DNA of 64,000 nucleotides from Kudoa neothunni (GCA_964304625.1 OZ199839.1:9405779-9469778); one strand, 5' to 3'. Positions 3,407 to 48,538 are shown, counted from the first letter of the stretch. Made by a program: numbers and translations. The notes: generated by a model from the sequence alone, not told the origin.

Positions 3407-6221
3407 TTATATGAAACGCTTCTTCCGATAATTGACGGTCAAATAAATAAATGGAGAATAATATGACCAAAGTTAATAAAATTGCGATAACCCTAAACGA
3501 AATTTAAATATATATATTAAATATGATACTTTGCGTGCGTGTCGCTAACAAATTGAATTATTATACTTTGACAAAGTAAATTTACTTTTTTTTGGAATGA
3601 CCCACTTTACTACCTGAAATAGTTAAAAATGAAATTCACGTAATGTAATTAACAATATAAAATAGTTTTATTACCCTCCTCAATTTCAGCAACACCATAA
3701 ATTGAAGAATCGCTTTCCAAAATAACTTGCAAGTGATAGTCAGATTTGTTGGAAACAGGCGAAATGTTAAAATGAAGACACAAAGGAATCTGAACACATC
3801 CAGTCATGTTGATGGGAGTACATCGTTTAACAATATTTCTAATATCAATGGTATCCAAATCTGTAAGATACCACAAACATTTTGCTTTATTTTGATCAAC
3901 CCCAGGAGGGAGTGTTGTTTCCACCTCGAATAAATTTCCATTTCTCGTTATTTTTAATGTCAATTAATTTTGAAGCATCACTGATGAGCGGAGGTAAAGT
4001 TCCTAATAAACGTTTTTATTATACAAGACGCCAAAAACCGTAAAGTATCAATATTATTACTTGGACTCACGGTAATATTTTGTTTGTAGGAATATTGGAA
4101 CGATTTTACTTCAACAAAGTACTCTTCTGATGGTTTATAGTGGTGTGTAAAGACGATATTTGAGCAAAGAGGAATAATGGCACAGTGACCAACATCCTCA
4201 TTAATATCAGGACCATCATTCTCAGACATTTTAAACGAATAATTCATTTGTAACGGACAAATGAAAACCGGAAAATAGTTTCCAGCTGTAATTAGCCATA
4301 CTTTGTAAAAGCACTTGGCTTGTCGTAACTGAATATGTGACTCCTCTTCTGCCTTCAGCATGAAACCATTATCCGTGTATGTTTTTTTAAAATTAATATC
4401 ATTGTTTTCTAAATGTTATACTATTTATCCTATGGAAACATAATCGGGATAATACTTGTTTTAAATTTGAAAATGTGTAACCCGAAATAGTCAGAAGCAA
4501 CTACTTTTAGGTCATATTCGGTTGCTTCTTCGAGTGAATAGAGCAATGTCAACGTAGAGCATGGTTTCCTGCATGGATTCCCCAAATAACATACAGCTTC
4601 ATAATAAATATCTTTATTAGCTGGGCTGAGATAATAAGTGCATGATAAAGAAAACTCAGATATAGCAAAGTGAGGTTTAATATCAACGACTGCTTCGTTA
4701 TAATTTGTCAGAGCCACTTCAGATTCAACCATATAATTTATTATTGTGTCTAAAAAATTACTACATCAAACTAAATATTTGTTGTTATTACTTGTTCTAA
4801 TAAATAATTTCTCCGTAAATTCGAACCCCATTTTCTCGGTAACATTGAGAGCAATTATATATGGTCTCCCTGGATATAATTTAGTTAAATATTTAATACT
4901 GTAGCATTCTGTATCACAAACACCACCATAGCTACAAGTGGGTGGCTCTAATGTATCTAATAAAGGTGTGGGTTTGTCTGCTTCATATATCATTAATTCA
5001 CAACGAAAAAATTGGTCATCCCAAATAAAACCTTTTCAGGAGGGTGAAATTAATTTTTACATGAACAGACGATGAATCAAGGAATAGATTGTTTTGGGTT
5101 TGAAATGTTTTGATAATCACTAAAAACAAAAATCGAAGCTCAAATCTAATTAGAACATCAAATTAGTAGCATACCCAGCTTTGATTGACTAAACCCTCCC
5201 AAATTGTATCTAGTTCTTATCAAAACATCCACGATTGGCATATAACCTGCCATGAATAAGGTGACGTCATTACAGTAGCTGTAACATTTTCTGTCCTTTT
5301 TATTTCCACAATTTGACTGGTACATATATTTTTTGCTAGGAGACGCATCGCTTCCTTTTCTAATATTGAACTCACATATTTCTGGTTCGACTTGGTTGGA
5401 GAACTTCAAGCTATATCCATCTCTGTTCGTTCCGGATGTGTATTCTACGTGAAACTGTCGCTGAAACACATCAATATGATTTCTCATATATGTGTTTGGC
5501 ATTATATAAAAGAAAAGGTGGATAGAGATTGCAATTAATTTTATAACGTGGGACCATAACGTGAAAATCAAGTATGATTCTTCTGTTTTTCTCAACCTCA
5601 TTGAAACCATAACATTTCAACGAATTACAAGAAACGTTACAAGAAGTGTCCAATTTTGAAATTTTTATTACTAAATTTGATTTTTTTAGTTCCTACTTTA
5701 TATTTTGGGTTAATAATTAAAGCTAAATATAGTTGATAACAGATATGTAGCATTCGTTTAGCATACGGATTGAAAACACCAAAAACAACACCAATGGTTT
5801 GGGGGTTGTGTTTTTTTCGTTTGGATAATCAATTTCTCTAACCAGTATATACTTGATCCTAGGGAGAAACTTTCTTATTTTTAAGGAAAATTTGTCTGAT
5901 TGGCATTTCGTGATACACATGTCATTTGGAGAAAGTGAATCATCCTCACAATTGGCATCATTATTAAACGTCCTTATTTTTTCGTCGACCACAGACAAAA
6001 AGCAATAATTTTCAAATATTTTTACATTCAGCTTTAATCTAAATTGATAATTAACAGACAGCATATACTTTATTGAGCCCGTAGATGAAAGTTTTTTTGG
6101 ACTTTGCAAGCAATAAAAAGTTCGTAATGGAACCTTAAAATAAATATTCTCATACAATTAAGAATATAAAATTACATAAAATAAAATATATGAAAATATA
6201 TATTCAAACTCGGATGAACAT
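3407..6221 (-). CDS. Cys-rich FN3-like type I membrane protein, paralogue A (10 exons; several 1-nt frameshifts and a TGA in exon 1 as assembled, so pseudogene or assembly error)
   Basis: ORFs 5723-6157, 5158-5653, 4766-4993, 4430-4732, 3978-4361 and 3649-3963 are colinear with paralogues B-D. Micro-exon 3530-3544. TM VIAILLTLVILFSIYL followed by RKKRF after a 1-nt frame correction. Confidence 0.8.
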
Positions 6222-7767
6222 TATTAATTATATCGACAAATAAGATTATTTGGATAATACTTATATTAATAATTTAATATGGATAAATGACACAACGTGA
6301 ATTTGCCATTAAGTGAAAATAATGTCGGTTTATATTAACTTAAAAAATTACATTTAAGTCTATTGATTAAATTCTTAAATAAATATACCACCTATTATTT
6401 TCAGTCTTATATTTTAAAATTCTACATTATTTAAAGTTTTATTTTATTCTATATATACACTTGAATGTTAGTTATGAAATATTTTGAAAAAATAATATTA
6501 ATTTGAGAATACATTTAATTTAAAATATAAAGATATGTTTCTATAAATGTATCGTTTTCTTTACAAAAATTCGTCTAATTAGTCTCAATTAAAAACGTAT
6601 TATATTTAGTTACTAATTTAATTCTTTGTTTATTATATTTTTAACCGGAATTTAAATATATATATACATATAATTCCTATATTATTTTTTGATATTTTTT
6701 CATTGATAAAATATTATAATTAAAAAATTAAAAATTATACTCATTTGGATAAATATACTCACGTTTTCTTGCGATTAAGGCCGAATCAGTAAAAAAACTA
6801 TACTTTGACTGTAACTACAGTCGACAACGCCTAGGTCACTTTCGAGAGAATGAATTGAATGGGCCAATCCAATTGGATTAAATTTAATCATTTCAATGCC
6901 TGATATGTGTGAGCAATATAAATTAATTCTTTGATGATTTACGATTTTTTGGTTTGAATAAAACAATAAAATGTCAGTTATATTTTAAAATAATACTGGT
7001 ACATGTTTAAGTATATAAATTTTGACATTAATTCAAATATTAATGGAAAACGTAGATATTTACCTATATGTGGTTTCCTCTTTGTATGTAAAACATTGAA
7101 TACAAAAGATTTGTAAAAAAGTCTAAATTTAAGTAAAATAATTTTATATACATTAAAATTTATTAAAAATCAATAATTTTTTTGTTCCATTATTTTATTC
7201 ACAATCCTATAAAATAAATGAATCCATATTATTTATATTATTATAACGATACTTTTATTTATATTCTTAAAAAAATAACTTTTATTATTTTAATGATAAA
7301 TAATATATTTTTTCTATAACTATTAACTGGCTAAAATCAATGAAATAATTTATTAAAAATATTAACGTATATTAATATTCGGTTTTATTTCAAAACTTTT
7401 TCCTCACTTTTTTTACTCGTTATCAGTATTTTAAATAATTTGGATCCAATTTTTTCAAAATAATGTTGTTTCTTATTTTTTACTATAAAATTGTGGATTA
7501 ATATATATATATATAAATATTGAAATGAGTTAAAAATTAAATAATTTAATAAAAATGAATAAAACAAAATTTATCTTAATGATCATCTAATGATTTTAGA
7601 TTTTGGGGTAAATTTTACTTCAAGCCGATTTTGTATTCATTATATCTTTTTAATTCGTCTATTAAATATCACGAGATTTTCAATACTCCTAGATCTTGTA
7701 ATGATTTACTCTCACAAAATAAATTCAAAAAGAACTAATGAAAATAAAAAGTTTTACTGAAATATTA

Positions 7768-9143
7768 TCCTCTAGTGTTTTTTTGGGTAAAATTTACCTT
7801 ATTGTTTTATTATTGTAGTAAAAAGAGGATTATGTAAATAATCAAATGTTACATTATTAGTTAAATCACACGAGTAGATTTGACGAAAACAATGAACAAA
7901 ATCACTAGTTGGGACAATGCGCATGTGCAAGTAGCGCATAATTCTAGTGAATGGCGCGAGTGATTTCATTAAAGAATATACCCCGCATGGAAACGAATAT
8001 GACGATCAAGTTATTTATAAAAGTGATATAACAGGCGACGAAATAGATATTAATTATAATAATTTAAAACGTAAAAGTGGAATTATTTGGAGCTTATCAA
8101 AGTCATCTACGAGAAAACCCTGTGCATACAACATAATGAGTTTCATCCGTGATGTCATTTCGTATGTTGTATCCAAAATAAAATCATTTATTCATTGGTT
8201 TTTGTTATCCTTTATCTCAAAAATAGATAGTATTATCATAAAGTATGCAAAAATATGCTTGGAAATCATTATTTCAATGATGATCGACAAGATGCCAATG
8301 AAACTGAATTTAAAGGTTATGTAGACCATCTAATACTAACAGCTATTCATAAGGATAGACAAGTACCACTGACAATACTGTCATTGATGCGTCTAAAAAT
8401 TTAAAACCTCATACGACAATGCGTTACAAAGCAACCAAAGATGGGATTGATAATGTGGATAGAATGTTGGCATAAATTTCTACCCAGATGTTTAAAAGAA
8501 GATAGCCGTTTATCGTCTTTTCGACATGAGTGAAATTTCGTTGAATAATGCGTTTGCATAATTAAATGACATACTTAATTCAGAGAAAAAATTAAGGAGA
8601 AACTTTTTGAAAGAGATTTCTAATAAATGTACAATCAATTGTAAACTGAATCTCCAGAAAAGTTATCAAAAAAAATTTAAATAAATCTGATATTCGTATA
8701 ATGATCCAATTTTAAATAAAAAACACGCTGAGATTATTGTGAAAGATAAATGATCAGAGAAACTCTAAATGGTGTCATAATTGTTGCAGGTTTTATTTCT
8801 TCACTCACGTGTCGAAATTCTTTTGAATTGCCAAGGTTAATTGCTGTTCTTATTTTTGTCTCTTGTAATTTTTTTATGAGTCTTTTATTAGCCGATAACA
8901 TTACTTTTATTTTGTAACTGCTTAGGAAAAACGTCGATATATCCCAGAAATGTCATTATTGAGATTAGTTTGAGATTACTTGGCGTACTACATTAAATAT
9001 TCCAATGATTCTACCCCTTGAAATTTAACAATATTTTGTATCCTCCATTTAATTATTATTTACACACATCGGAGCAATATAAAAGTGGTGTAATTTTTAT
9101 CCAAAAAATGTTACAGGGGTACCTTTTTGAGATAGTTAGAGGG
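7768..9143 (+). mobile_element. Internally deleted, degenerate piggyBac element
   Basis: Right end TTAGAGGG|TTAA and degenerate left end TTAT-CCTCTAGTG. ORF 7947-8324 resembles a piggyBac N-terminus. Downstream remnant reads TKDGIDNVDRML...KRR*P (TKGGVD..D...RRWP motif). Confidence 0.75.
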
Positions 9144-9311
9144 TTAATAACCTAACATATATATATATATATATATAGCTACTAAAAATAGAGATTTGAT
9201 AAAATACAAATATTAGCCAACAAAAAATAATTTGAATATTGAATTTTTTTTAGGATTAGCACTAATGACGTAGAAGTAATGTAACGTTGATTTTTTCGCC
9301 CAACTAATTAA

Positions 9312-12107
9312 TTAATGGTTGGGCAAAATCATACGTTTCCTCCAAATTAACATTAAATACGTAATCGAAAAGAGTAGAACGAATGTGAATAAAATTACGA
9401 TTATCCTAAAAATAATTTTAAAATTCAAAAATAAAAAAAGTACCTCAAATTCTTATTCCTATATAAAAAAATTAATGATTACGAAGGAAGGAAAATTTAC
9501 CCAGCATTTGAAGCTGCAAATTTATTATCTATATTATTACATAAAGGTCGTGTAAAAATAACCGGTGCTGAAATTACCTATTATTATTATTTCGGCAATA
9601 CCATAAATTGAAGGATCCTTTGCCAGAATAACTTGCAGGTGATAGTCAGTTTGCGTTGGAAACGGAGGAAATATTAAATTGTTCGCATGTCGGGATCTGT
9701 ATGCAACCAGTTATGTTGTCCATTGTACATCGCTGAGTTATTTTTCTTGTGCCAATCGCATTCAAATCGCTTAGATTACCACCAGCAATCTCGATTTAGT
9801 AGAATCCAGCCCAGGAGGAAGTTTTGATCCTACTATCAATGTATCTCCATATCTATTAATTGAAACTTCAATTATTTTTGTTTTATCGGTTTGCAATTGT
9901 GGGAACGATTCTAATTTAATTTTAAGTAATAAAAGGCCAAATATTAACAGATATAATATTCTATATTTCTACTTGGATCTACCGTAAGATTTTGTTCGTA
10001 TGAAATTTGAAATGGTAGTATTGCTATAAAATATTCTTCCGTAGGATCGTATTGATGGGTGAAGGTAATATTATTACAGTGAGATACAAAAGAACAATTT
10101 TTTACATCGTCCATGTTTAATACATCTTTTTCCATTATTTTAAAAGCATGGTCGATAACAGACGGACATCTGTAAACTAGCACAAAAATTTCACCTTTCT
10201 TTTTCCAAATTTTGTAGTAACATTGTTTTTGTAGTAAATCAGGACTTGTATTATTGATTTCTGCATAAATCATAAAGCCATTATCAATAAATACTTGTTT
10301 AAACTTGATATTATAGGCCTCTATTAAATATGAACGTAAAATATAACAGTTATTCTTGTATTTACTGGTTTTAAAGTTGAAGGTATGTACACCAAAACTA
10401 TTAGAAGATATAACTTTTAAATCATAATTAGTTGCTGGTTGGAGCGACAACATATAAGTCAACGTAGAACATGGTTTTCTGCATGGATTAGCGAAATAAA
10501 CATTCTGCCTCATAAAAAACTATCCTCACTTGCCCTACTGAGATAATACGAGCAAGTTAATGAGAAATGGCTTGTCAAAATATTCGGCTCAATATAAAAT
10601 ATTCCTTCGTTTAGATTAATGGAGGCTATTTCTAACTTGGGTTGTAATTTTTCCACAGGAGCTATCAAAACTATACAAAAATTTTAAAATAACAATTACT
10701 TGTTCTAAAAAATATTGTTTCTATGAAAGTGAAATTGGTTTTCTCAGTAACATTTAAGGCAATTATATATGGTCTTCCAGGTGATAGGTTAATTAAATAT
10801 TTTCGTTGATAACAATCAGTATCACAAGGAGAATTATCATTACAAATAGCCTCTATAAACGACGTAGGTGAGGGTTTGTCCGCTTCGTGTATCATTATGT
10901 TACAACAAGATAAATGACTATCTTGAAAAAAACTTCTCACTAGGGTCAAATCTAGTTTAACCCCAAATGAAGAAGGTTCTATCAATGGCTCTCTATATGT
11001 GTCGAAATTTCGGAAAATCACTAAAAATATATTATTTATGTAATTTCGATAAATACTAGATAGTATGGCGATTTACCTACTTTAGATAAATTAATTCCAT
11101 GATACTTACGTCTATTTTTAATCGTAATCTCAACAATAGGAGTATAACCTCTCATAAACAACGATACTCGATTACACGGAGCATAACATTCGCCCGCCTC
11201 ACTGTTACCACAATTTGATTCATATTGATATTTGTTGTGGTGGGATGTGTCGCTTCCGTTCCTAATACTGAATTCACATATTTCTGGTTCAGCTTTGTTG
11301 GAAAATTTCAGTTGATACTCTGCTTTATCAACTCCGGGTTTATATTCTACGTGGAATTGTGGCTGAAAAACAGCTATATTTTTTCGCATATACATATTTG
11401 GCATGTGGTAATAGAAGGGTGGATGTTCAATGCAACTCATTTTGTAATACGTTATTAACATACTGAAGTCCAGTTCGAATGTGTCAAAATCGTAAGTCCC
11501 GTTCAAACCATAGCATTTCAAAGAAGCACAAGAAACTGAACAAGTGTATTGTTTTTTAGTTATTTTCAGCATCAATGATGACTTTTTTGTATTTATTTTA
11601 AATCGTGGATAGATCAAAATGGCTAAAAAAGTATTATATACAACATAATTAATCATGGTTACGGATAGTCAGACCGAAAACGATTGCACCCTGCACTGTT
11701 GAATCAGCGGAATTTATATTATCAATTCCCTGGGTTAAAATGTATTTTAATCTTGGATACATTTTTGAAATGCCCAGTGAATAACTTTGTCCTTGGCAGT
11801 TCGTAGCACATATATCCCTTTGATGAACTGATTTATCGCTGCAGATATTTTCCTCCGAAAACCTCATTTGATTTTCATTCGCCATGCTCAACTGACAAAT
11901 AGATTGTTTTATCCCAATTCTAATGTTTAGTCTCAGTTTCAGCCTGGAACCAGTGCATTTATATTCAAGCACATCTTTAGCTTCTTCGTTCTGATTAGTT
12001 ACCATATGAATGCATATAAAAATAAAATCTAATATACAAGAACAATTAGTTAAACATTAAATTAAGTTCTTACAGACTACAATGAATTGGTAATATGTAA
12101 AAATCAT
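9312..12107 (-). CDS. Cys-rich FN3-like type I membrane protein, paralogue B (frameshifts near 10500-10540 and 9650-9800 as assembled)
   Basis: Spliced signal peptide MIFTYYQFIVVYFIFICIHMVTN. ORFs 11649-12005, 11036-11656, 10671-11021, 9944-10513. Micro-exon 9444-9458. TM and tail IIVILFTFVLLFSITYLMLIWRKRMILPNH*. Confidence 0.85.
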
Positions 12108-12460
12108 TAATATTAATTAATTGTTAATAATAATATTATATAAATTAAATATACTTATTGCCTTAATAATAAGCGTCGTGATTAATCATAATAAATCTAA
12201 CCAAATATAGTCATTAATCCTAGTAATTATTTTAATCACATTATATGTAATTCTTTATTAATTTGTTAGTTTAAAAATGGTGTCACAATAACAATAATAA
12301 ATTATAGAATAATAAAATTAGCTTAAAATAAGAAATATTAAGAATACTTCCTATTAGAAAAAATAATAGTAAAATTAAAGATAAATATTTTATTTTCATG
12401 GTAATTAATTTTATCACAGGCTTGTTTACCTTTGAATATCAAAATTATAATGTTTTGTCA

Positions 12461-13462
12461 ACCGTCTAATGTATTAAAAATCGACTGTACTCCGACGAAT
12501 TTGGGGAAAAAAATTACCCCAGTTTTATATTTCACCATTCGTGCCATAAAAAATATTTTATTTCAGAAAATAAAAAAAAGGCATAATTCCATTGTTAGAT
12601 TCAGCTGTAAAACAATTAACATCCTAGTAGTAATCCTCATAATCCTAGGAAAACTGTATTCGTTAAAATCCGCAATGACAATTTTTGATTAAAACTTAAT
12701 GTTTGAGTAAATTTCACATTTTTAGCATTAAATAAATATTTTAATTATTATTTGCGCAACAAAATAGAATATTGATCATTCATTTGATATACTGAGTTAT
12801 AACAGAATAGATAAGATTGAACTCTTAGGATTTTGGGCATTAATGTAGTTCCTTTTAATTAATGTAAACATATAGTAACTTCATCATATTTTAAAAACTT
12901 TTCTCATACCATATTATCTCACAAGTTTTTTTGTAACTGAAATATGCATTTATAAATAATGCATCCATAAAAAGGAGAAACACCACCATTGGGCGTCATT
13001 ATTGATTACCGATTGTGGATTGACCCGAATTCTCAAAATTTTCAATCTCGTCAGATTCTCACGGCATATCAGTTGTAAAGTATCCATAATCACTTTAAAC
13101 GAATTTAATTCTTAATTTTAGTTATTATCGGTGAAATCCATCTCAATTATAGCAATGTTAAAAATAAATAAGGACGTCACGTGATCATTAGCATAGGTAA
13201 TAACCGTATAACTACAAATTTATCTATCATATCAACCTACAATTAGACTTACATAATAATTATTACATTATCTATCAATTGAGTTGAAAAAAATCTGGAG
13301 TAATTTTTTACCTCAAAAATTCATTGGTGTAATCATGTTATAATTTTTCTGATTTTATAATTTTAATCATAATATTTTAAAATCTTATATCAATAATTTT
13401 TTTGGATGATTACAAACAAATTCGAATCGTATGAAAAACAAACAAATCACATATACAACCAT
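12461..13462. mobile_element. Non-autonomous piggyBac derivative lacking its right TIR; copy of 20759-21892
   Basis: Colinear, same-orientation similarity to 20759-21846 along its length. Degenerate left TIR CCGTCTAATGTA. Confidence 0.8.
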
Positions 13463-14839: not shown

Positions 14840-17610
14840 TTATTTGAATCGTTTTCGCAAAACTACCACCAAACATATTGTTGAGACGAGAAAAAAAAGT
14901 GGGATTAATATTAAAATTAACCTAAAACTTTTTTTAATAATATCAAAAAATATATTACATTGAATTTTTTTTTCTAGTAATAAAATAATAGAATGCACAT
15001 TAAAATAAAAATACTTAATGTTGGACTTTGCAAATTTTTGACCTACAAATAATAATAAATTACGTGAAATAAAGGTAATAGATATAAAATTGCCCTTATA
15101 TATTTCTACAGTACCATAAATTGAAGGATCTCTTTCCAAAATAACTTGCAGATGATAGTCAGTTGTATCAAATACGGAAGAGATGTTAAATTGATTACAT
15201 TTTGATATTTGACCGCATCCAGTTATGTTGTCTACTGTGCATCGTTTAAGAATCCTTCTCGTACCAGTCGCATTCAAGTCGCTTAGATACCAGAAGCATT
15301 TCGAATTGATGATATCTATTCCGCGTGGAAGACTGGATTCCACCATAAAAGTATTTTCAATTCTGGTAACTGTAATTCCAATAATGTTTGATATATCTGT
15401 GGGAATGGGAGGAAACGACTCTATTTTAATTCCAAATAATTATTAATCAAATTATACCTGAAATAATGTAATACAATTATACTTGGATCAACCGTTAAGC
15501 TTTGTTCATACGAATTTTGAAATGGTAATACTACGATCAAATATTCTTCGGATGGATCATATCTATGAGTGAAGGTGATATTTTTACAAGGAGGAACTTG
15601 AATGCACGATCCTGCGACTTCCACGTTTAACACTTCGTTATCCATAGTTTTAAATTCAATAGCGTTAGAAGAGGGACATCCGTACACGAGGAGATTACTT
15701 CCACCCTTTTTAACCCACACTTTGTAATAACATTCTGCTTGCTTTAAATCAAGACTTGATGTGTCTTCTGCATAAATCATGAAGCCACTGTCGATATATT
15801 TTTGTCGAAACGTAATATTATGAGATTCTACATGATGTGATGATTAAATGATTAATCAAAGAATTATTCACTCGTTTTAAACCTAAAAATATGCTCACCA
15901 AACTCATCAGAAGTAACCACTTTCAAACTGTAGTCTGTTGCCGGTTGGAGCGACACAAAATAAGTCAATGTAGAACATGGTTTTCTGCATGGATTGGCCG
16001 AATAACAAACGGCCTCATAAAAATTGTCTTCGTTGGCCAAACTGATATAATAGGAGCATGTGATGGAAAAATCAGTGACTAACACATTGGGCTCAATGTA
16101 AATCAAACTTCCATAATGATTTCTCAAAATTTCTTTAGCTTCGGGGTGCACATGTATTCCAAAAGCTATCACAACAGTGAAATCGTTTTATAATAGAAAT
16201 TACTTGTTCTAAAAAATAGTTTTTCAGTGAATCTGAAGTTATTTTTATCGGTAACATTGATGAGAACAATATAAGGTCTACCCGATGGTAAATTTACTAA
16301 ATATTTTATGTTGTCGCATTCATTATCACAGGCAAGGTTTTTGAGACATCTGGCTATCTCTAACGCTTCTATTGATGGACTAGGTTTGTCGGCCTCGTAT
16401 ATCATGAAATTGCAATAAACAAAATGGATATCTTGATACAATCGTTTCAGTAGAGTCAAATTAAATTTAACATAATTTGACGAAGGTTCTAACAATGGGT
16501 ATCCATAAGTCTCGAAATCCTTCAAAATTACTAAAAAAATATAACTTTGAGTTAATAGTTATTTGAATTCAATTTATATACCAAACTTAGTTCGATTGTC
16601 TACATTGTCATTATGTCGGGTTTTAATCAAAATATCCACTATCGGACTATAACCTTCCAAAAATAATGAAACGTCTTTGCATGGAGCTAAACATTTCCTA
16701 TCCTTGTTATTACCGCAATTTGACTCATACACATTGTCGCCAGATGTGTCACCTCCCTTTCTAATACTGAATTCACATATTTCTGGTTCAATCTTGTTTG
16801 AGAATCTCAGTCGGTATTCGTTGTTTTCATTCTTATTCATATATTCTACGTGGAATTGTGATTGATAAGCGTCAATGTGTCTTCGCATATACAAATTTGG
16901 CATGTAATAAAAGAGTGACGGTTGTTGACGGCACTTTATTTCATAATAGATAGCCATTATATGAAAGTCAAGTTCAAAATTGGTTCTATCCGAAGTAGAC
17001 CCCAGACCGTAACATTTTAGCGAATTACATAAAACCGAGCAAGACATTGGAATTTTTTTAACTTTTATTATTAAATTTGAATTTTTGGTTCCAACCTGAT
17101 ATTGAGGATATATTAATGTTGCTAAACATTTTTGTAAATGACGAATAATTATTTATGTTTACGCAGAGGTAGACCATAAACGGATCCAACATTGGTGATA
17201 TGACTGGTAATGTTTAGATTGTCAGTTTCTTCTATCAACATATACTTTATTCTTGGATACAATCTTGAAATTTCCAGTGTAAAACTCGATGATTTGCACT
17301 TTGTTGCACATATTTCACTCTGAAATACTGATTGATCTTGGCAAATATTCCTCTTAGAGAATTCGTTCTTATTCTCTTTTGAAAAATATAACTGGCAAAC
17401 AGTTTTTGCTACTTCGATATTCATATTTACTCGCAACCTTAGCTTATAACCGGAATATTTGTACTCTACTTCACCTTTTGCTTCACCATTCTGGCTGTTT
17501 ATCCATAAAGTGGATTGTGTAATATAGTCTAAAATGTTTCTTTATAGAAGAAAGAAAATAAAATTTATAAACTTACATAATAAAATATGTAGGGAATATG
17601 AAGATATCAT
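14840..17610 (-). CDS. Cys-rich FN3-like type I membrane protein, paralogue C; intact 10-exon model, 785 aa
   Basis: Exons 17610-17577, 17528-17163, 17121-16582, 16530-16204, 16165-15872, 15827-15483, 15420-15094, 15042-15015, 14973-14959, 14921-14840 sum to 2358 nt (786 codons including stop). N-terminus MISSYSLHILLYYITQS; C-terminus MLILILIPLFFLVSTICLVVVLRKRFK*. Confidence 0.9.
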
Positions 17611-18439
17611 TAAAAAACATTACAAATTATTATTTTTAATAGGATTAAGTTAATTAAGTTTTATTAATGTTACCAATGGGTAAAAGTATTAAATATAATT
17701 AATTTTTATATATTTACGAACTTTCCGTATTACATTAAAACACTTTTAACGAATTACATTCATATCTTTTAAAATAATAATCCATATTCAAAAAATATAA
17801 ATAGGAAAATTCAGGAAAAGTATATTAACAAATATTTAATTGAGAAAAATGGAGAATAGGGTAAACTTTCCAATCATACACTTCCGTTAATTAAAGTGAT
17901 CTTTGTAAATATTCGCCAAATTCCCTTACTCTATACTAAGAATATAAACCTTTTAGTATAATAAATCAACTCGATTACTAATGAATTTATGTCATACAAT
18001 AGGAAAGGAATAAATTATATTTTTAATTATTAAATATTTATTTTCTCAGTAATAACATACTTTAAACAACTAATCAAATGCGGTATATTTAATTTTTAAT
18101 TCAACAAAATATTAGATTCCATAACTAATTAAAAAATGTTGTGGAAGGCACGATTTTTATATAATCGTATAGATTATACAAAACCTTTAAAACATGCACT
18201 TAAAATTTATTATGCTTTAATAAAATAAAGGATTAAAAGAAATCTTAAACTAAGATACATTCAAATTCATAATATAAACAATATCATTTTTTATACAATC
18301 TTATTAGGTGACATTTTGTGTGTAATTTTTTTCATTGATAACTATTCTACAGATAAAATTATTGTTATTTAATATATTGAGAAACATATCAATTTATAAT
18401 AATTTAAAATAATAATTTTATTGAAAACAATTGTTATTT

Positions 18440-19700
18440 ATCGGGTAAATCTCTAAGTCTGACTGTGTTTGTAGCATCCTAAAATTTGCTACTTTTAGCC
18501 ATATTTTCCAATTTTTTATGATGAAACTTTTAAAGCGTTTATTATTCATACGAATAAGATTGTGAGTTTTTCATTACGATAGTAAATGGAAAAATCTTCC
18601 TTCAGCGAAATCTGAATTATATATATGTTTATCTTTAAATACAAAAATGGAGTCACTAAGAAAAATGTGTACCTTGAATTAATTATGCGATATATTTCTT
18701 AGAGTTATTACACTAGAATAGTCCTATTCAAAAAAATAGAAGTCCTTACTTTGGTGACTATGAGACGAGAAATCGAATGTTTTGCCTTTTAACTAATGTT
18801 TTCAACTGATGGAAAATTTAATACCGATGTGTTTAGTTCCTTTTGTTACTCTTACTGTCGATGAAACACATAGTTACATTCAGAGGAGAGTGTCCCTTTA
18901 AGCAGTATGTGCCCTCTAATCCTGTATTTATTAAATTAAATTTTTTTTTCCAGACCTTCAAAACAACTATACATAAGATTTCTGTTTACCATAGAAGAAA
19001 TAATAACCAAATCACAAAGTTAAATGTATTTGTGAAACATTATCTGATAATTTTTCATTTCGGTTCCGTTAGCGAACAAAAATCTTAACTGTCAACACTC
19101 CGAGGGACTATTTGGAATCATGTACTAGGTATCTTACAAATTCTTTAAGCTAGTGAATCAAAGGCGAATATTAGTTCAATTTTCCTTTTACATGATAGGA
19201 AAATGATGATGTCGCATGTTCAAAAAAACGACAAGTGGTCATTTTATGGGCTAGATTATTACACAATGTAAATTAATGTCAAGTTCCGTCAAAAAAAGCT
19301 TCCGATTATCATCGCAATAAACAAAAATAAGGGTGATATGGTTACGGTAAATCTTGTTTTGTCTATTGAAAGTGTAAAAAGAATCGTTGTAAATAGTTAA
19401 CATAATAAAAATAATACTTTATAATATGGTTGAAATAAGTTTACTTAATTCATTTTATTTATATATAAGTTAAGTAAATCAAACCAATATTCGTAGAAAC
19501 AATTATTTATAGTAGCTTGTGGAGTCGTGAGTAAATCCTACTTAATATAACTATGCTGATTTCTGCGAATAAAATCTTAAATTCTATGACGGAAAAAAGA
19601 TGCAGCTCATGCATCGATTCTTCTATGTAAAATTAAAGAACAAATCGTATGATTTCTTCAAATGTTATAACAATAAATATTTCAGAAATATTCGTTACGA
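18440..19700 (+). mobile_element. Highly degenerate piggyBac transposase remnant
   Basis: VDE..IVTFRGECPFKQYVPSNP (piggyBac VDEQLVxFRGRCPFxQYxPSKP motif) at about 18855-18925, and a degenerate NKNKGDMVTV (NxxKGGVD) near 19320. Boundaries approximate. Confidence 0.7.
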
Positions 19701-20758
19701 ATACGTAAGAAAAAAATGTGAATTAAAATTTAACTATTTGAATATTATATTTTCTTAATTAATTTTTATCATTTCTAAAAAAATTAATATTAATTCATTG
19801 ATAAATAATTACGAATCCATATTTTATTACAAATAATTGATATGTGTGCTAGCCTAATCATCCATGTGCCTGATTATTTTAATATTTATAACAATATTAG
19901 TTTAAGTATATAATATTTTAAATTATTTTAAAATCCAATGAATAATTTTTACAATAAAAAAATCAGATTCGTGTTGTTTCAAGATAACATATGTATTTTC
20001 ATTTATTATTATTAGTTTAATTTCCTCTGTCATCCTAAAGAGTTCTGGATAATACTTAAAAAACATCAAAAGATACATTAAGAAATAATTTTATTATTAT
20101 GTAAATACTGCATACTCCAAAATAAACGATCGAACGGTTTTCAGTTATTTTCGCCTGGTAGATTAATTAGGATGTTGTTGTTAATCGGTTTGAAAAAACT
20201 CCCCTACGAGCGAAATAATATTTAATAATATTTTCTATCAAAATATATAAGAATTTAGAGTTCCCCTTTATTCTAAATCTCCAAATACTTCAGGATGTAC
20301 AGTCGTTTTGGGGATATTTGAATGGTTAAAGTGCAAAATGATATCACCCTTATTTAGATAAATATGGACCGATCAGAAAAATTCTCCATTAATAATTTAA
20401 ATTTAATTACTATTAACATATCAATTATAAATTCGGATCCGCTTAATTTCCAAAAAAAATTGATGAGATAGGAAATATGAGAATCTTTTGTTTATCTCCT
20501 TAATTTATTTCATAGATTATCTTAAATTATCACAGCAAAATAAAATTTATTAAATTAAACAAATATTTATGTTCTTTATTTTGTGTAATGAGAGAAAATT
20601 CATAAAAAATAATCCATCCCTTCTAATATATATTATAAAATCATTTTTTTAATTATAATAATAACTCTGTATACGATTATTTATATAAAAGTCCTAATCA
20701 GTAGTCGGCAGTTTAAAACAATATGCAACAATATTTCCATAAAAAATATGAACATTAA

Positions 20759-21892
20759 CCCTCTAATGTACCAAAAAATCGACTGCACTCCGATAAATTA
20801 GGAGCAAATAAGTACCCCAGTTTTTTATTTCTCCATTCGTGTCATAAAAATTATTTTATTTCAGACAATAAAAACAGGCATAATTCCATTGCTAGATTCT
20901 GCTCTGAAACAATTAACATCCGAGTAGTAATCCGCAATGGACTATTTTTTATTAACGCTTAATGCTTGATTAGATTTCATATTTATATCATGTAATCAAT
21001 ATTTTAATTATTATTTATACAATAAATAGAATATTTAATGAGAATAGATTTCATAAACACTCAGAATGAATTTTGCGACAATTAAGTATATCTGAAACAA
21101 GCAGTAGCGGGTTACCTATCTCTTTTCCGTAAAAAACATTCAAACCTTAAAAATACTGTTCATTTTTTTGGTGTGCTGAATTATAACGGAATAGATAAGG
21201 TTGAGCTCCTAGGATTTTGGACTTCAAGGATGTTTCTTCACATTAATGGAAAAAAATAGTAACTTCACCATATTTTAAAAAAACTTTCTCATATATTATC
21301 TCACAAATTTTTGTTGTAACTGGAACATGTATTTATAAATAACAAATACAAAAAAATAGGAAAACACCAACATAGGGCGTCATTATTGATTACCGATTGT
21401 AGATTGAGCCGAATTCTCTAAATTTTCAATCTCATCAGATTCGTATGACATATCAGTTGTAAATTATTAGTAATCACTCTAAAATAATTTTATTCTTCAT
21501 TTTTATTAGTATCGGTAAAATCCATATCAATTATGACAATGTTAAAAATAAATAAGGACGTCACGTGATCATTAGCATAGGTAATAACCGTATAACTACA
21601 AATTTATCTATCATATCAACCTACAATTAGACTTACATAATAATTATTACATTATCTATCAATTGAGTTGAAAAAAATCTGGAGTAATTTTTTTACCTCA
21701 AAAATTCATTGGTGTAATCATGTTATAATTTTTCTGATATTATAATTTTAATCATAATATTTTAAAACCTTAAATCAATAATTTTTTTGGATGATTAGAA
21801 ACAAATTCGAATCGTATGAAAAACAGACAAATCACATATACAACCATTAACTTCTCGCCGGGGTAAAAATTTACCCCATATTCATTAGAGGG
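20759..21892. mobile_element. Complete non-autonomous piggyBac element (about 1.13 kb)
   Basis: TTAA|CCCTCTAATG ... CATTAGAGGG|TTAA: perfect 10-bp TIR and TTAA TSD on both sides. Subterminal palindrome GGGGTAAAAATTTACCCC. Confidence 0.9.
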
Positions 21893-22085
21893 TTAAATAT
21901 ATTCACCGCACTTTTTTAATAAAAATTATATTAATCGTATTTAATTAATTTAAGTGGATTTTAATAAACTTCATTGCAATAAGACATTCTCTACCAATAA
22001 ATGTGTGAAAAACAAGATGAGTGAACGATGTTATTTCGTAATTAAAATAATAGTTTTAATCTTATTATTTCGATCCTCAAAAATT

Positions 22086-24874
22086 TTAATGGCGTTTTTT
22101 ACACCAACAACAGAGTATTACAACAACACAAATAATAACAGCAATCCCGACGGCGCCAATTATTCTAAACCAAAAATTATTTCACTCGCACATTACATCC
22201 AATACATGTAGGTTTTAGAACTATAATAATAATAATAATAATATAAATTATAAAAACAAGTAAATCAAAAAATGCGATACCCAAGCAACCTAAAAAATTC
22301 TCCACCTGATATATAATTAATCAGCAACGTATTATATTAACTAAACTCACCATTTACAATTTCTATCACACCATAAATTGAAGGAGTTTTCTCCAAAAAC
22401 ACATGTAAATGATATTCAACACTTTTTTGTCAATTGTGTAATATTGAATTTTTCGCATGGCAGTGAATCCGCACATTCCATTCTATTGTCAGAAGTACAT
22501 CTTTTGATTATATTTCTATCAGCAGTGTTCAGCAAACTCAGATACCACAAGCATCTAGAGTTTTTGTTCACTTCAGGGGGCAGCTTAATTTTCTACACGC
22601 AGAGTAGTGTCTTCACGTTTAACTTTAATATGTATTTTCTTTGAATTATCTGTTGGAGTTGGAGGTAGTTTCTCTAATTATTTATATGTTCAAAGTGTTA
22701 CAGACGATAAAAATTCTTACTTGGGTCTATTGTGAATAGTTGATCGTAAAAATGATGGAACGATACTACTGCTATTAAATACTCTTCCAAAGGGGTTATA
22801 GTTGTGTGTATAAGTGATATGTGAGCACATTGACACTTGAGTACAACTAGGTGTGGTCTCATGAATTTTTTATTTCTTCGTTCTCTACCGCTTTAAAACA
22901 GTGAGTCCAATCCCGACGGACAACTATAAACAGACACATTTTTCCCAGCTGTTTTAAGCCATACTTTGTATTGACACAAGGCTGTATCGGCGTTGAAAGT
23001 AGTTCTATAAGGTGTTCGTAACTGGAATCCGCCGTCGACAAAGGTTTTTCGAAATTCAACTTTATACGGGGCTATAAAAGTTATTTCTATTGCGTCATTG
23101 AAAAGAATACGATATATTACGTGTTCGGAACTTTTTCAAGTGTATACCATTGTCATCAGCAGAAATCACTTTCAAATCATATTCGGTTGCCGCTCTCGTG
23201 GTGAATATCCTGGTTTGTGTATTGCAAAGTTTTCTACAAATATTACCCTCTTGACAACCAGTCTCCACAAACATATCTTTGTCTGCCAGACTGATGTAAT
23301 AGGCACATGAGCGCGACACATTTTTAGTTATATGATGTGATCTAGTCGTCAATGTTACGGCTTCACTAGTGACATAGAAAAATTCAATAGATAAAAATCC
23401 ATTAGGATGACTGTCTATAAAGAATACAATAAAATCACAAAAGGTTTAAACATTACTGGTTCTAAAGAAAAGTTTCTCAGTGAAGTTATAATTGTTTCCT
23501 AATTTAATTTTCAGGGAGATTATGTATGGTCTTCCGGGTAATAAACCAGGAATCCTCTTAACATTGTCGCATCGTTTATCGCAAACAACGTCGTTGTTGC
23601 AATAAACAGTAGTTAACGACTCCAGAGATGGAGGGGGCTTGTCAGCCTCATACAATCTTATATCACACTCAACAAATAAATTGTCAAATTCGACTTTTCT
23701 CAACAAACTCAAATCAAGTTGAACACTATTATATGTGGGTTTAATTAATAAAATTTTGCTAGAGTCATTCTCGTTAAAAATCACTATAAAATATTCACTT
23801 AAATAACAATTATAAATATTGTACCAAGTTTTGTTTGTTTAAATCCGCTGAGGTTGTTTTTTGTTTTTATTAGAATTTCTACGATAGGAACATGCCCAGA
23901 CATGTACAATGTGACGTCCTGGCATGGAGCATAGCAGGTTTTATCGTCTTCATTCCCGCATTTTGATTCATATATGGAGTAATTTTTTCGGACAGGTTTA
24001 CTTACATCTCTAATACTAAATCCACATATTTCTGGTGCTGCTTTGTTGGAGAACTTTAGCGTGTATTCAGCACGCTCATTTCTACGCGTGTATTCCACAT
24101 GAAACTGGGGTTGGAAAACGTCAATCTTATTTCTCATGTACTGATTAGGCATGTGATATAAGATTGGAGGAAGTCTTAGACAACTTAAAAGATAGAAAGG
24201 AGCCATAATATGTAAATCAAGTTGAATATTGTGATAATCTGCAATTTCACCTTCACCAGAGTAAACACCATTGTAAACCACCTGGCACGAAAGGCCTTCC
24301 AACTCCGAAATTCCTATTACAAGAGCTGTATTACTTATGTTTATTTTAAAGCAGGGAGACAATAGCAACGCTAACAAATGGTAATATACATCAACAACAA
24401 CGTAGTCATACGAATATGTAATCCATAAACTTGGCTATTGATGGGAGAAGCTTCAATATTAGATGTTGGCTCATCCAACGTTTGTACGTATGTATATTTT
24501 GTGTTCGTTGAATATGTCTCAAGCATAAAATTTGTACCGACCTCTTCACATTGACGAATACACCTTCTATCGGAAGAATCTAACTTATTTGTACAAATAG
24601 TTTCCTCATAGCCGTTTTTATCTTGATTGCCTATTCTTAGGTAACAGTATTTGTTGGAGGGATAATTGTTTCCATGTAATTTCAATTCCATGACGTAATT
24701 CATGAGATTGTAGACGAGAGTGTTATTTTGTGAATGCAAGTTAGTGCTCACATAAGTCAAAAATCCACAAAGCAACCCTTCAAATATTTGCATTTATTAG
24801 TTGTCATAATTCAATTATCGAAACTTACATATATTAAAATATTTTGAGTATGTCTTAATCACCCCAAAGCTCAT
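22086..24874 (-). CDS. Cys-rich FN3-like type I membrane protein, paralogue D (most divergent; frameshifts at 22550-23070 as assembled)
   Basis: Exon 1 MSFGVIKTYSKYFNI splices to WLLCGFLTYVS. ORFs 24371-24793, 23799-24377, 23446-23784, 23095-23352. Micro-exon 22206-22220. TM and tail IIIGAVGIAVIICVVVILCCWCKKRH*. Confidence 0.85.
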
Positions 24875-47937: not shown

Positions 47938-47995
47938 ATAGATAGATGATAGCTAGATAGATAGATAAATAGATAGATAGATAGATAGAAAATAG

Positions 47996-48060
<65 letters not shown>

Positions 48061-48112
48061 AAATAGATAGATAGAAAATAGATAGATAGATAGATAGATA
48101 GAAAATAGATAG

Positions 48113-48165
<53 letters not shown>

Positions 48166-48175
48166 AAATAGATAG

Positions 48176-48206
<31 letters not shown>

Positions 48207-48233
48207 GATAAATAGATAGATAGATAGATAGAT
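47938..48233. repeat. (GATA)n microsatellite with GAAAATA / GATAAATA interruptions
   Basis: Direct reading; produces the spurious YLSI-repeat ORFs. Confidence 0.97.
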
Positions 48234-48538
48234 TGTTGGAACAAAATTCTCCTCGGTAATATACAACAGGTATCATAACAATAAATCTAAAAGACCCTAG
48301 AAAAATAAGGTAATGCAATTGAAATTAATATAAAATATTGAAAAAGTAATAATGTTCCTTAACGATTGAGTATTGAGTCATTGTTAACCAATTGATTGGC
48401 TAACAATAATTATGCTTTAACTAGTGGTGAAATTTTAGTCAAACTTGTTTTCTTTTTTGTTCAGATAATAGTTTACTGTTAGAAAAACAACAAATACAAC
48501 TGTTGCAAATGCCATAATTATTATCCTAGAAATCCACC

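What the first reader, a model, noticed from the sequence alone, without database searches (positions are those of the whole stretch)
3407..24874. Tandem array of an unrecognised family of Cys-rich, FN3-like single-pass surface proteins: candidate variant-surface-antigen locus
Seen: four head-to-tail paralogues (A-D) share a 10-exon plan, signal peptide, about seven Cys-containing modules, one TM helix and a tail of 10 aa or less. Copy C reconstructs as an intact 785-aa protein. Cys positions and motifs (QFHVEY, FSN..PEIC.F.IR, YEADKP, PGRPYI, C.KPC.T) are fixed while the loops between them differ heavily. Knowledge: L.P.T.Y.(L/V)KV..G is the FN3 F-strand signature, and expanded, divergent Cys-rich surface families with tiny tails underlie antigenic variation or host binding in other parasites (e.g. 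Giardia VSPs, Ichthyophthirius i-antigens). Inference: a lineage-specific surface antigen, adhesin or decoy repertoire in a probable myxozoan. I recognise no named family.
Basis: partly seen in the sequence, partly recalled or inferred. Interest (0 to 1): 0.88.

Follow-up and report, generated by a model that had tools for sequence, protein, structure and literature searches.

The report
Huge FN3-like surface-protein family in Kudoa
The four tandem genes are real but three are broken, and they are a side branch of an undescribed family of at least about 210 membrane-anchored, fibronectin-III-like proteins in the tuna muscle parasite Kudoa neothunni, whose role at the parasite surface is plausible but untested.

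Summary
Four head-to-tail minus-strand paralogues (32-57% amino-acid identity) share a 10-exon plan: signal exon, six domain exons with phase-1 introns, two micro-exons, and a TM exon with a 4-9 residue basic tail.

- **Intactness:** only copy C is intact (792 aa in my model). A, B and D each carry at least two frameshifts or stops.
- **Family size:** the genome holds at least about 210 copies on all three chromosomes. 30 of 40 sampled loci have all seven modules in open frames.
- **Fold:** the exon-5 module is FN3 by Pfam, PDB profile and AF2 fold searches. Exon 3 folds as two beta-sandwiches. Each module has four fixed Cys.
- **Cys content:** the protein is not Cys-rich (3.7% Cys, no CXXC).
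- **Relatives:** the exon-3 profile finds only 19 unnamed ORF fragments among 1.84 billion proteins.
- **Organism:** almost certainly Kudoa neothunni, which supports the myxozoan guess.
- **Selection:** dN/dS is 0.17-0.51 (loops 0.30, strands 0.18), so no diversifying selection was detected.
- **Mosaicism:** recent paralogues differ far more in their 5' halves than their 3' halves, suggesting gene conversion.
- **Expression:** no RNA data could test it.

Other first-stage notes of this scan saw the same family elsewhere in this genome. The variant-antigen reading remains possible but unsupported.

The parts
14840..17620 (-). Copy C: the only intact gene of the array. It has 10 exons and a 792-aa type I membrane protein in my model.
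   Evidence: The spliced model has no stops. Its nine introns are 37-62 nt, eight GT-AG and one GC-AG.
17577..17620 (-). C exon 1: start codon and a putative signal peptide (14 aa plus 2 nt)
   Evidence: An ATG is followed by a hydrophobic stretch and a GTAAGT donor, with a 37-nt intron joining the exon-2 frame. This is an inferred signal peptide; no predictor was run.
17163..17539 (-). C exon 2: module 1 (4 Cys; an 'LSPRxKYIYV'-type strand in the wider family)
   Evidence: Module HMM hit at 6.7e-38. The module is conserved across the family. Two of 12 members give a weak Pfam NDNF Fn(III) hit.
16582..17121 (-). C exon 3: modules 2 and 3, two tandem beta-sandwiches with 8 Cys. It carries the QFHVEY and PEICEFSIR motifs.
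   Evidence: AF2 model with pLDDT 69. Foldseek finds basigin, IL-17R and cytokine-receptor tandem domains at E 1e-4 to 1e-2. The own-genome search gives 150 scored hits (E 6e-108 to 2e-24).
16204..16530 (-). C exon 4: module 4, the most variable module (YEADKP and GRPYI motifs)
   Evidence: hhalign to module 5 gives probability 90.6%, E 1.3e-6. Family mean column identity is 41%. It has the highest dN in most recent pairs where it was compared.
15872..16165 (-). C exon 5: module 5, an FN3 domain (CRKPC and 'LQPATDYSLKV' motifs)
   Evidence: 28 of 37 paralogues hit Pfam fn3, best E 1e-5. The PDB profile finds titin, fibronectin and Dscam. AF2 pLDDT is 72. VIA-align's top 50 are nearly all FN3, with Z 6.2-7.3.
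15483..15827 (-). C exon 6: module 6 (4 Cys)
   Evidence: Module HMM hits. hhalign to module 7 gives probability 48%, E 1.8e-4. There is no Pfam or PDB sequence match.
15094..15420 (-). C exon 7: module 7, the membrane-proximal module and one of the two most conserved. It is followed by a GC donor at 15093-15092.
   Evidence: HMM hit at 7.4e-34. Family mean column identity is 54%.
15015..15042 (-). C exon 8: a 28-nt micro-exon
   Evidence: It has AG/GT flanks and its phase fits. The homologous micro-exon is 22 nt in the wider family.
14959..14973 (-). C exon 9: a 15-nt micro-exon
   Evidence: It has AG/GT flanks. Equivalent 15-nt exons lie in A (3530-3544), B (9444-9458) and D (22206-22220). 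In other members it is 15-18 nt.
14840..14921 (-). C exon 10: TM helix, 5-aa basic tail (RKRFK) and stop
   Evidence: The highest Kyte-Doolittle 19-residue window in the protein is here (3.09). TM and tail are shown.
3407..6157 (-). Copy A: a pseudogene with all seven modules. There are frame breaks in exon 3 (about 5504-5514), in exon 4 (about 5025-5035) and in the TM exon.
   Evidence: HSPs are split between frames. The TM helix and the ancestral tail lie in different frames.
9312..12035 (-). Copy B: a pseudogene. There is one frame break in exon 5 (about 10510-10520) and two in exon 7 (about 9650-9660 and 9753-9798).
   Evidence: HSPs and HMM hits are split between frames.
22086..24793 (-). 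Copy D: a pseudogene. There is a frame break in exon 6 (about 22863-22908), an in-frame stop near 22590, and a frame break near 22425 in exon 7.
   Evidence: The ORF list shows exon 6 in two different frames.
60282..63317 (+). A fifth, very divergent family member on the other strand with a duplicated module set
   Evidence: Module HMM hits for ex3b, ex4/5, ex3a, ex3b and ex4/5 (E 6e-13 to 4e-3). There is also a weak tblastn hit.

Best explanation
The locus is a small, old and mostly decayed branch (one intact gene, three pseudogenes) of a very large family specific to the Kudoa lineage.

Shown:
- Each gene encodes a type I membrane glycoprotein: signal peptide, seven beta-sandwich modules, two micro-exon-encoded juxtamembrane segments, one TM helix, and a basic tail of only 3-9 residues.
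- At least one module is a true FN3 domain. Every module has four fixed Cys, which would allow two disulfides each.
- The family has at least about 210 copies, in many tandem arrays on all three chromosomes, and most sampled copies are intact.
- The coding sequence is under moderate purifying selection.
- Recent paralogues are mosaics. The part encoding modules 1-4 differs much more than the part encoding modules 5-7 and the anchor, at synonymous and intronic sites too.

Inferred:
- With no cytoplasmic domain, the protein can act only through its roughly 25-nm glycosylated ectodomain, as a coat or binding molecule on the parasite plasma membrane.
- The repertoire grows by tandem and inter-chromosomal duplication, gene death, and segmental exchange that recombines variable distal halves with a conserved stalk.
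- I take the most likely role to be a diversified host-facing adhesin or coat repertoire of the plasmodium or sporoplasm. I make no claim of programmed switching.
For: - **Architecture:**. About 30 of the 35 sampled loci with an exon-7 hit show a TM helix 145-195 nt after exon 7 and a 3-6 aa basic tail.
- **Fold:**
- **Family size and spread:** 150 scored hits (all but the self-match at 1e-52 to 2e-24) out of 450 candidates; 366 candidates for exon 5; the CYAPC-coding pattern matches 222 times against 12 in the control.
- **Intactness:** 30 of 40 sampled loci have all seven modules in open frames.
- **Selection:** NG86 dN/dS is 0.17-0.51 in 19 pairs; loops 0.30 against strands 0.18. Loops are more variable than strands, with column entropy 1.9 against 1.5 and 1.8 against 1.3.
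- **Mosaicism:** in several pairs, including inter-chromosomal ones, the 5' half is mostly 58-93% identical and the 3' half mostly 90-100%. The switch lies near the exon 4/5 boundary and dS differs between exons.
- **Local origin:** A-D plus the neighbour L001 form a clade with 100/98 support on a long branch.
- **Lineage restriction:**
- **Organism:**
Against: - There is no expression, localisation or binding evidence. RNA runs under the same species label gave zero reads, which is no test. The source paper says very few transcriptomic reads mapped to the parasite.
- Three of the four window copies are dead, so this array contributes at most one protein.
- About nine of the roughly 30 sampled tails end in a KKxx-type di-lysine pattern. 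In other eukaryotes that pattern retrieves membrane proteins to the ER.
- The AF2 models are of moderate confidence (pLDDT 69-72).
- Modules 1, 6 and 7 have no sequence-level match to any known domain.
- The mosaic pattern could partly reflect different constraint rather than gene conversion.
Confidence: 0.55

Rival explanations
1. This is a true antigenic-variation system. One or a few of the hundreds of genes would be expressed at a time on the parasite surface. Pseudogenes and segmental gene conversion would supply new variants to evade fish antibodies.
For: - The repertoire is large.
- Pseudogenes lie within arrays.
- Recent paralogues are mosaic.
- The distal modules and loops are variable.
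- There is a tiny conserved basic tail, as in other variant coats.
- Antigenic variation has been reported for other myxozoans, according to the S. molnari preprint.
- On chromosome 1, 17 of 40 hits lie in the last 0.85 Mb (my tally).
Against: - dN/dS is 0.17-0.51 and loop dN/dS is 0.30, so no diversifying selection shows at this resolution.
- The window pseudogenes are only 32-57% identical to C, too far to serve as conversion donors.
- As general knowledge, not tested here: Kudoa plasmodia grow inside muscle fibres, largely shielded from antibody.
- There are no expression data.
Confidence: 0.15
2. These are parasite-intrinsic cell-cell adhesion or recognition molecules. The diversified ectodomains would mediate homophilic or heterophilic contacts between the parasite's own cells: primary and secondary cells, valvogenic, capsulogenic and sporoplasm cells. 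Alternatively they would mediate self/non-self recognition between plasmodia. Clustered IgSF and FN3 families do this in other animals, including the cnidarian Hydractinia Alr genes.
For: - The domain-per-exon, phase-1 FN3/Ig-like architecture is typical of animal adhesion molecules.
- Purifying selection is predominant.
- Modules 2-3 and 7 are strongly conserved, suggesting a conserved interaction surface.
- Myxozoans are cnidarians.
Against: - Hundreds of copies seem excessive for an organism with very few cell types.
- The 3-5 residue tail gives no link to cytoskeleton or signalling.
- No relative was found in free-living cnidarians for the exon-3 unit.
Confidence: 0.2
3. These are ER or secretory-pathway residents, or GPI-anchored proteins released from the cell, rather than stable transmembrane surface proteins. 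The KKxx-like tails would retrieve the proteins to the ER, or the C-terminal hydrophobic stretch would be a GPI signal.
For: About nine of the roughly 30 sampled tails fit K at position -3 plus K at -4 or -5. Small residues encoded by the micro-exons precede the hydrophobic stretch.
Against: - Most tails (RKRN, KNKN, KKNKS, and RKRFK in copy C) do not fit the di-lysine rule.
- A charged tail after a 20-29 residue hydrophobic stretch is typical of stop-transfer anchors, not GPI signals (general knowledge).
- A highly diversified ectodomain is hard to reconcile with an ER-resident role.
Confidence: 0.06
4. This is non-functional repeated DNA: a dead or selfish multicopy element whose open frames are relics.
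For: Three of the four window copies are broken. The published genome is 45.6% repeats. Close copies lie on different chromosomes.
Against: - 30 of 40 sampled loci keep all seven modules open.
- dN/dS is well below 1.
- Cys, splice sites and intron phases are conserved.
- No transposase or terminal repeats were seen within the units.
Confidence: 0.03

Closest known systems
Animal multi-FN3 type I membrane proteins (LAR/PTP-delta ectodomains, DCC, contactins, cytokine receptors, titin-type FN3)
   Same: Module 5 matches Pfam fn3 and FN3 structures. The plan is one domain per exon with phase-1 introns. The overall layout is a tandem beta-sandwich rod on a single TM helix.
   Different: - Each module has four fixed Cys, whereas classical FN3 has none.
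- There is no cytoplasmic domain, only 3-9 residues.
- Modules 1, 2, 3, 6 and 7 are unrecognisable by sequence.
- There are at least about 210 copies rather than a few.
- No orthologue was detected outside Kudoa-like sequences.
Hydractinia Alr allorecognition family (Huene et al. 2022, PMC9546547; cited in PMC11792419; features recalled from knowledge)
   Same: Both are cnidarian clustered families of single-pass proteins with divergent Ig-like domains that sequence searches barely detect. Both clusters contain many pseudogenes.
   Different: Alr proteins have 2-3 domains and long signalling tails with ITAM or ITIM motifs. There are about 41 Alr genes in one complex. Homology was neither detected nor specifically tested here.
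Giardia variant-specific surface proteins (VSPs) and the VSP-like genes reported in Sphaerospora molnari (bioRxiv 10.64898/2026.02.11.705288)
   Same: Both are large families of type I proteins with a variable ectodomain, one TM helix and a very short conserved basic C-terminus. The S. molnari motif is [KR]X[KR]XK[KR]; here the tails are RKRN, KKKN or RKRFK. The parasites in both cases infect fish or are myxozoans.
   Different: VSPs have more than 10% Cys (per the S. molnari preprint; its own screen used at least 5%) and many CXXC motifs. Copy C has 3.7% Cys and no CXXC or CXC motif. The fold here is FN3-like beta-sandwich. S. molnari has 18 such genes. The sequence relation to the S. molnari genes could not be tested.
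Ichthyophthirius i-antigens and Tetrahymena Ser proteins
   Same: Both are fish-parasite or ciliate surface coat families with periodic Cys-containing repeats.
   Different: Those are GPI-anchored and built of CX2C repeats, not FN3-like modules. No sequence or fold relation was seen.
Clustered adhesion-receptor repertoires (chelicerate sDscam, clustered protocadherins)
   Same: Both are tandem arrays that generate many FN3/Ig-type ectodomains. sDscam FN3 domains appear among the structural matches.
   Different: Those use alternative first exons spliced to shared constant exons. Here each copy is a complete gene with its own anchor.

Membership tests
FN3 domain (Pfam PF00041) | Significant sequence match to the fn3 profile | tested here: met
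   For module 5, 28 of 37 paralogues match fn3 with best E 1e-5, and the PDB profile's top hits are titin, fibronectin and Dscam. Copy C's own exon 5 gives no hit on its own. Module 4 is linked only through hhalign to module 5 (probability 90.6%).
FN3 domain (Pfam PF00041) | Seven-strand beta-sandwich with FN3 topology | tested here: met
   The AF2 model of exon 5 has pLDDT 72 and six predicted strands of 3 or more residues. VIA-align's top 50 are nearly all FN3, with Z 6.2-7.3 and rmsd about 3 A over 70-80 residues. Foldseek gives probability 0.99-1.0 but E of only 0.02-0.1. Confidence is moderate.
FN3 domain (Pfam PF00041) | All seven modules are FN3 | tested here: inconclusive
   Exon 3 folds as two beta-sandwiches resembling Ig or cytokine-receptor tandems.
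Giardia-type VSP | At least 10% Cys with many CXXC motifs | tested here: not met
   Copy C has 29 Cys in 787 aa (9-exon model; 792 aa in the final model), which is 3.7%. It has 0 CXXC, 0 CXC and 5 CXXXC.
Giardia-type VSP | Conserved CRGKA-type five-residue tail after the TM helix | tested here: not met
   The tails are 3-6 basic residues (RKRN, KKKN, KKNKS, RKRFK). They are similar in length but not in sequence.
Variant surface antigen system (functional class) | Large diversified repertoire | tested here: met
   At least 150 scored hits, 450 candidates, and 222 pattern matches against 12 in the control. Family column identity is 41-54%.
Variant surface antigen system (functional class) | Diversifying selection on exposed loops | tested here: not met
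   NG86 dN/dS is 0.17-0.51 for whole genes. Pooled loops give 0.30 and strands 0.18. Site-level models were not run.
Variant surface antigen system (functional class) | Mutually exclusive or switching expression, and surface exposure | not testable with these tools
   No RNA run contained the organism: zero reads were laid.
Variant surface antigen system (functional class) | Segmental gene conversion among members | tested here: inconclusive
   Six recent pairs show a divergent 5' half and a near-identical 3' half, including introns. No formal recombination test was run.
Conserved low-copy animal ectodomain (RPTP, usherin and the like) | Detectable orthologues in other animals | tested here: not met
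   The exon-3 profile against 1.84 billion representatives found 19 hits. All are ORF fragments of 479 aa or less. The 10 looked up are unnamed singletons, and the 14 whose source was checked all come from Logan or ENA contigs.
Hydractinia Alr family | Long cytoplasmic tail with ITAM or ITIM motifs and 2-3 V/I-set-like domains | tested here: not met
   The tail is 3-9 residues and there are seven modules. Direct sequence or structure comparison with Alr proteins was not done.

The most novel reading that the evidence does not exclude
These genes would be the largest gene family of Kudoa, several per cent of its gene number, and possibly under-represented in the homology-guided published annotation. 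The family would form a variant surface coat whose diversity is produced by shuffling a variable distal cassette (modules 1-4) onto a conserved stalk (modules 5-7 plus anchor). That would be an antigenic-diversity system in an animal parasite, built from FN3 domains and convergent with protozoan VSG, var and VSP systems.
Probability: 0.15. Interest if true: 0.85.

Novelty: new variant of a known kind. Interest (0 to 1): 0.64.

Why it matters
Myxozoans are extremely reduced cnidarian parasites of commercial fish. Kudoa neothunni is associated with post-harvest softening of tuna muscle. How these parasites interact with host cells, and whether they evade immunity, is poorly understood.

A family of at least about 210 membrane-anchored FN3-like glycoproteins is large for a 40-Mb genome with 5,316 annotated proteins. 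The genome paper I read does not mention such a family: the words 'surface' and 'fibronectin' do not occur in it.

If the family is expressed at the surface, it gives concrete candidates for host-binding molecules, diagnostics or vaccine antigens. It would also offer a natural case of FN3 domains stabilised by two disulfides. The apparent variable-head, constant-stalk mosaicism would make the mechanism of repertoire diversification directly testable.

Tried and rejected
- **Pfam on copy C:** the six exon pieces gave nothing above noise.
- **Exon-3 unit:** the PDB sequence profile gave nothing. The ESM Atlas shape search gave only generic beta-sandwiches with TM below 0.5. The language-model look-alike search gave no usable hit.
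- **Modules 1, 4, 6 and 7:** Pfam and PDB profile searches gave only weak fn3 or titin hints for module 4 and NDNF Fn(III) for module 1. Weak EFF-AFF hits for module 7 (2 of 31 members, E 0.037) were treated as noise.
- **hhalign between modules:** only 4-5 (probability 90.6%) and 6-7 (48%) are related; the other pairs are not significant.
- **RNA evidence:** three raw metatranscriptome runs and one contig set under the host's species label gave zero reads. This is no test.
- **9-exon model of copy C:** replaced by a 10-exon model after family comparison.
- **Assembly error as the cause of the frameshifts:** some breaks lie beside T or A runs. However, the published QV is 48.5. Seven or more breaks fall in about 8 kb of A, B and D, against breaks in only about 10 of 40 other loci, so I read them as real.
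- **Subtelomeric location of this array:** rejected. The window lies 2.6 Mb from the only assembled telomere.
- **Relatives' contigs as evidence of transcription:** rejected. L042 still contains a 38-nt phase-1 intron and L041 has inter-ORF gaps, so both are genomic.
- **Not done:** the joined (spliced) protein of copy C was built only inside scripts, for length, Cys and sequon counts. It was not sent to any search or fold tool. All searches and folds were done exon by exon, by reference.

Full report
**The sequence**

The window is AT-rich (21-35% GC). It is G000:C2:9405779-9469778 of a 40.26-Mb genome in four contigs of 17.15, 12.04 and 11.05 Mb plus about 18 kb.

tblastn with the open-frame pieces of copy C finds four minus-strand copies with the same order of pieces. 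Identity is 32-57% and E-values run from 1e-14 to 1e-63. There is also one weak plus-strand hit near 63.1 kb. HMMs built from family alignments recover modules ex2, ex3a, ex3b, ex4, ex5, ex6 and ex7 in order in all four copies. They also show a fifth, very divergent member with duplicated modules at 60.3-63.3 kb on the plus strand.

**Gene model**

Reading the DNA of copy C gives a start exon and six domain exons, all joined by phase-1 introns of 37-62 nt. One donor is GC (15093).

My first model had a single 28-nt micro-exon and a 93-nt last intron. Aligning the stretch between exon 7 and the TM exon from 14 other members showed two conserved micro-exons. All four window copies have an AG/GT-flanked 15-nt exon at the expected place.

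It has 29 Cys (3.7%), exactly four per module, with no CXXC or CXC motif and nine N-x-S/T sequons. The only strongly hydrophobic segment lies at the C-terminus and is followed by RKRFK.

The joined protein was handled only inside scripts. Every search and fold used single exons by reference.

**Intactness**

A, B and D are broken.
- A changes frame inside exon 3, inside exon 4 and in the TM exon.
- B changes frame in exon 5 and twice in exon 7.
- D changes frame in exon 6 and exon 7 and has an in-frame stop.

Some breaks lie next to T or A runs. The published assembly QV is 48.5. Among 40 other loci sampled across the genome, 30 keep all seven modules in single open frames. I therefore read the breaks as real pseudogenisation, not checked against reads.

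**Family size**

Copy C's exon-3 domain gives 150 scored matches in the own genome, out of 450 first-look candidates. Apart from the self-match, they have E-values of 1e-52 to 2e-24. Exon 5 gives 150 scored of 366 candidates.

A degenerate DNA pattern for the nearly invariant CYAPC in module 3 matches 222 times, against 12 for the reversed control. Copies A and C themselves lack that exact motif, so about 210 is a lower bound.

Hits lie on all three chromosomes, mostly in tandem arrays. By my tally, 17 of the 40 chromosome-1 hits lie in its last 0.85 Mb. This window, however, is 2.6 Mb from the chromosome end.

Across sampled loci the TM helix follows exon 7 by 145-195 nt, and the tail is 3-6 basic residues such as RKRN, KKKN or KKNKS. 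Clear signal peptides precede exon 2 in several members.

In a maximum-likelihood tree of the exon-3 unit, A-D plus the neighbour 27 kb upstream (L001) form a clade with 100/98 support on a long branch. The other 38 sequences fall into subclades whose members sit on different chromosomes.

**Fold**

No exon of copy C hits Pfam. However, 28 of 37 paralogous exon-5 modules hit fn3, with best E 1e-5. A profile of them finds titin, fibronectin, Dscam, contactin and tenascin FN3 domains in the PDB.

AlphaFold2 with the paralogue alignment gives pLDDT 72 for exon 5. Foldseek's best matches are FN3 domains, with probability 0.99-1.0 but E 0.02-0.1. An exhaustive VIA-align search returns almost only FN3 domains in its top 50, with Z 6.2-7.3.

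Exon 3 (pLDDT 69) folds as two beta-sandwiches. Its best matches are two-domain Ig and cytokine-receptor ectodomains: basigin, IL-17R and others.

hhalign links module 4 to module 5 (probability 90.6%) and weakly links 6 to 7. The remaining modules share the four-Cys spacing and an F-strand-like motif but have no significant sequence match. The description 'seven FN3-like modules' is therefore shown for one module, supported for three more, and inferred for the rest.

**Relatives and organism**

A profile of the exon-3 unit was searched against 1.84 billion representative proteins. It finds only 19 hits, none longer than 479 aa. The 10 that I looked up are unnamed singletons, and the 14 whose source I checked all come from Logan or ENA contigs. 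The four contigs I fetched come from other samples. The two I compared with this genome gave only about 70-80% nucleotide identity over a short conserved stretch in one case, and no match at all in the other. One still carries a 38-nt phase-1 intron. The family therefore exists in related species but nowhere recognisable beyond them.

The genome matches the Kudoa neothunni assembly recovered from yellowfin tuna HiFi data (Weber, Paulini and Blaxter 2025, PMC12239612). The matching features are:
- a span of 40.2 Mb;
- a scaffold N50 of 12.0 Mb;
- three chromosomes plus a circular mitochondrial genome;
- 30.4% GC;
- a median intron of 49 bp;
- a (TAAACC)n telomere at one chromosome end only.

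I find that repeat only at the end of C2. The sequencing runs that hold the window carry a label shared with large WGS, RAD-seq and metatranscriptome projects, which fits a host-fish label. That paper annotated 5,316 proteins from protein hints. The words 'surface' and 'fibronectin' do not occur in it. Literature searches found no description of this family.

**Evolution**

Nei-Gojobori dN/dS for the 19 paralogue pairs with dS below 0.8 is 0.17-0.51. Pooling exon-3 and exon-5 codons by predicted secondary structure gives 0.30 for loops and 0.18 for strands. Column entropy is higher in loops.

In six recent pairs, including inter-chromosomal ones, nucleotide identity in the 5' part (exons 2-4) is mostly 58-93%. 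In the 3' part (exon 5 to the anchor) it is mostly 90-100%. The switch lies near the exon 4/5 boundary. It is seen in introns and in dS as well as dN. Segmental gene conversion or recombination is the simplest reading. Module 4 is the most variable module family-wide, at 41% column identity. Modules 2-3 and 7 are the most conserved, at 54%.

**Interpretation**

A tail of 3-9 residues cannot signal, so the protein must work through its ectodomain. Seven beta-sandwich modules with two probable disulfides each, plus nine glycosylation sequons, would form a stiff rod on the membrane.

A diversified host-facing adhesin or coat repertoire is my best explanation (0.55). Parasite cell-cell recognition (0.20) and a true switching antigen system (0.15) are the main rivals. 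About nine of the roughly 30 sampled tails fit a KKxx ER-retrieval pattern, which is an unresolved caveat.

RNA runs under the same species label gave no reads at all, so expression is untested.

**Verdict**

The family is real, unnamed, FN3-based, very large and myxozoan. However, this particular array is mostly dead, the protein is not Cys-rich in the VSP sense, and nothing yet shows antigenic variation. Other first-stage notes of this scan describe the same family on other stretches of this genome.

Noticed in passing
window 14843-15439 (-): In copy C the whole stretch from exon 7 to the stop codon is one open frame of 199 aa, covering three introns and two micro-exons. The introns total a multiple of three and contain no stops. 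Retention of all three would therefore still give a membrane-anchored protein. Intron 7 has a GC donor.
   Followed up: partly
L002/L003, L008/L013, L004/L006, L011/L013, L026/L033, L031/L037 (other loci of the genome): Recent paralogue pairs switch from roughly 58-93% identity to roughly 90-100% identity near the exon 4/5 boundary. This suggests a recurrent recombination or conversion breakpoint between a variable head and a conserved stalk.
   Followed up: partly
sampled loci L001-L040, C-terminal exon: About nine of the roughly 30 cytoplasmic tails (KKKN, KKKK, KKRN, KKKSD, KKKRD) fit the di-lysine KKxx ER-retrieval rule. The others (RKRN, KNKN, KKNKS) do not.
   Followed up: no
window 49039-50751 (-): A DEAD-box RNA helicase gene in two open-frame pieces (Pfam DEAD 5e-33, Helicase_C 5e-14). 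It is the only conserved housekeeping gene I identified in the window.
   Followed up: partly
window 55073-55960 (-), 32707-33219 (-), 58073-58360 (+), 26980-28009 (-): Transposase remnants flank the array. They are pogo/Tc5-type DDE_1 with HTH_Tnp_Tc5 (1e-35), piggyBac-type DDE_Tnp_1_7 (6e-26), and an IS1595-like DDE (7e-12). Another first-stage note calls a fourth ORF Tc1-like, but it gave no Pfam hit here.
   Followed up: partly
window 47909-48318: A simple tandem repeat reads as long IYLS-type ORFs in several frames. It is not a gene.
   Followed up: no
G000:C2:12039536-12040069: (TAAACC)n occurs only at the end of chromosome 2, as 85 overlapping matches all on one strand and none elsewhere. 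The published K. neothunni assembly also has a single telomere.
   Followed up: yes
L042 (Logan contig of another sample), 63-1502: A relative from another species encodes four modules in a single 479-aa exon, followed by a 38-nt phase-1 intron. Intron positions therefore differ between species or subfamilies.
   Followed up: partly
L015 (G000:C2:10199164-10202880): This locus holds an intact exon 2-3 unit. About 1.7 kb downstream lies a second exon-3 unit, split over three reading frames. It looks like a truncated copy next to a decayed one.
   Followed up: no
exon-7 module alignment A4: Two of 31 members give weak Pfam hits (E 0.037) to EFF-AFF cell-cell fusogens. This is probably noise, but the membrane-proximal module was not folded.
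   Followed up: no
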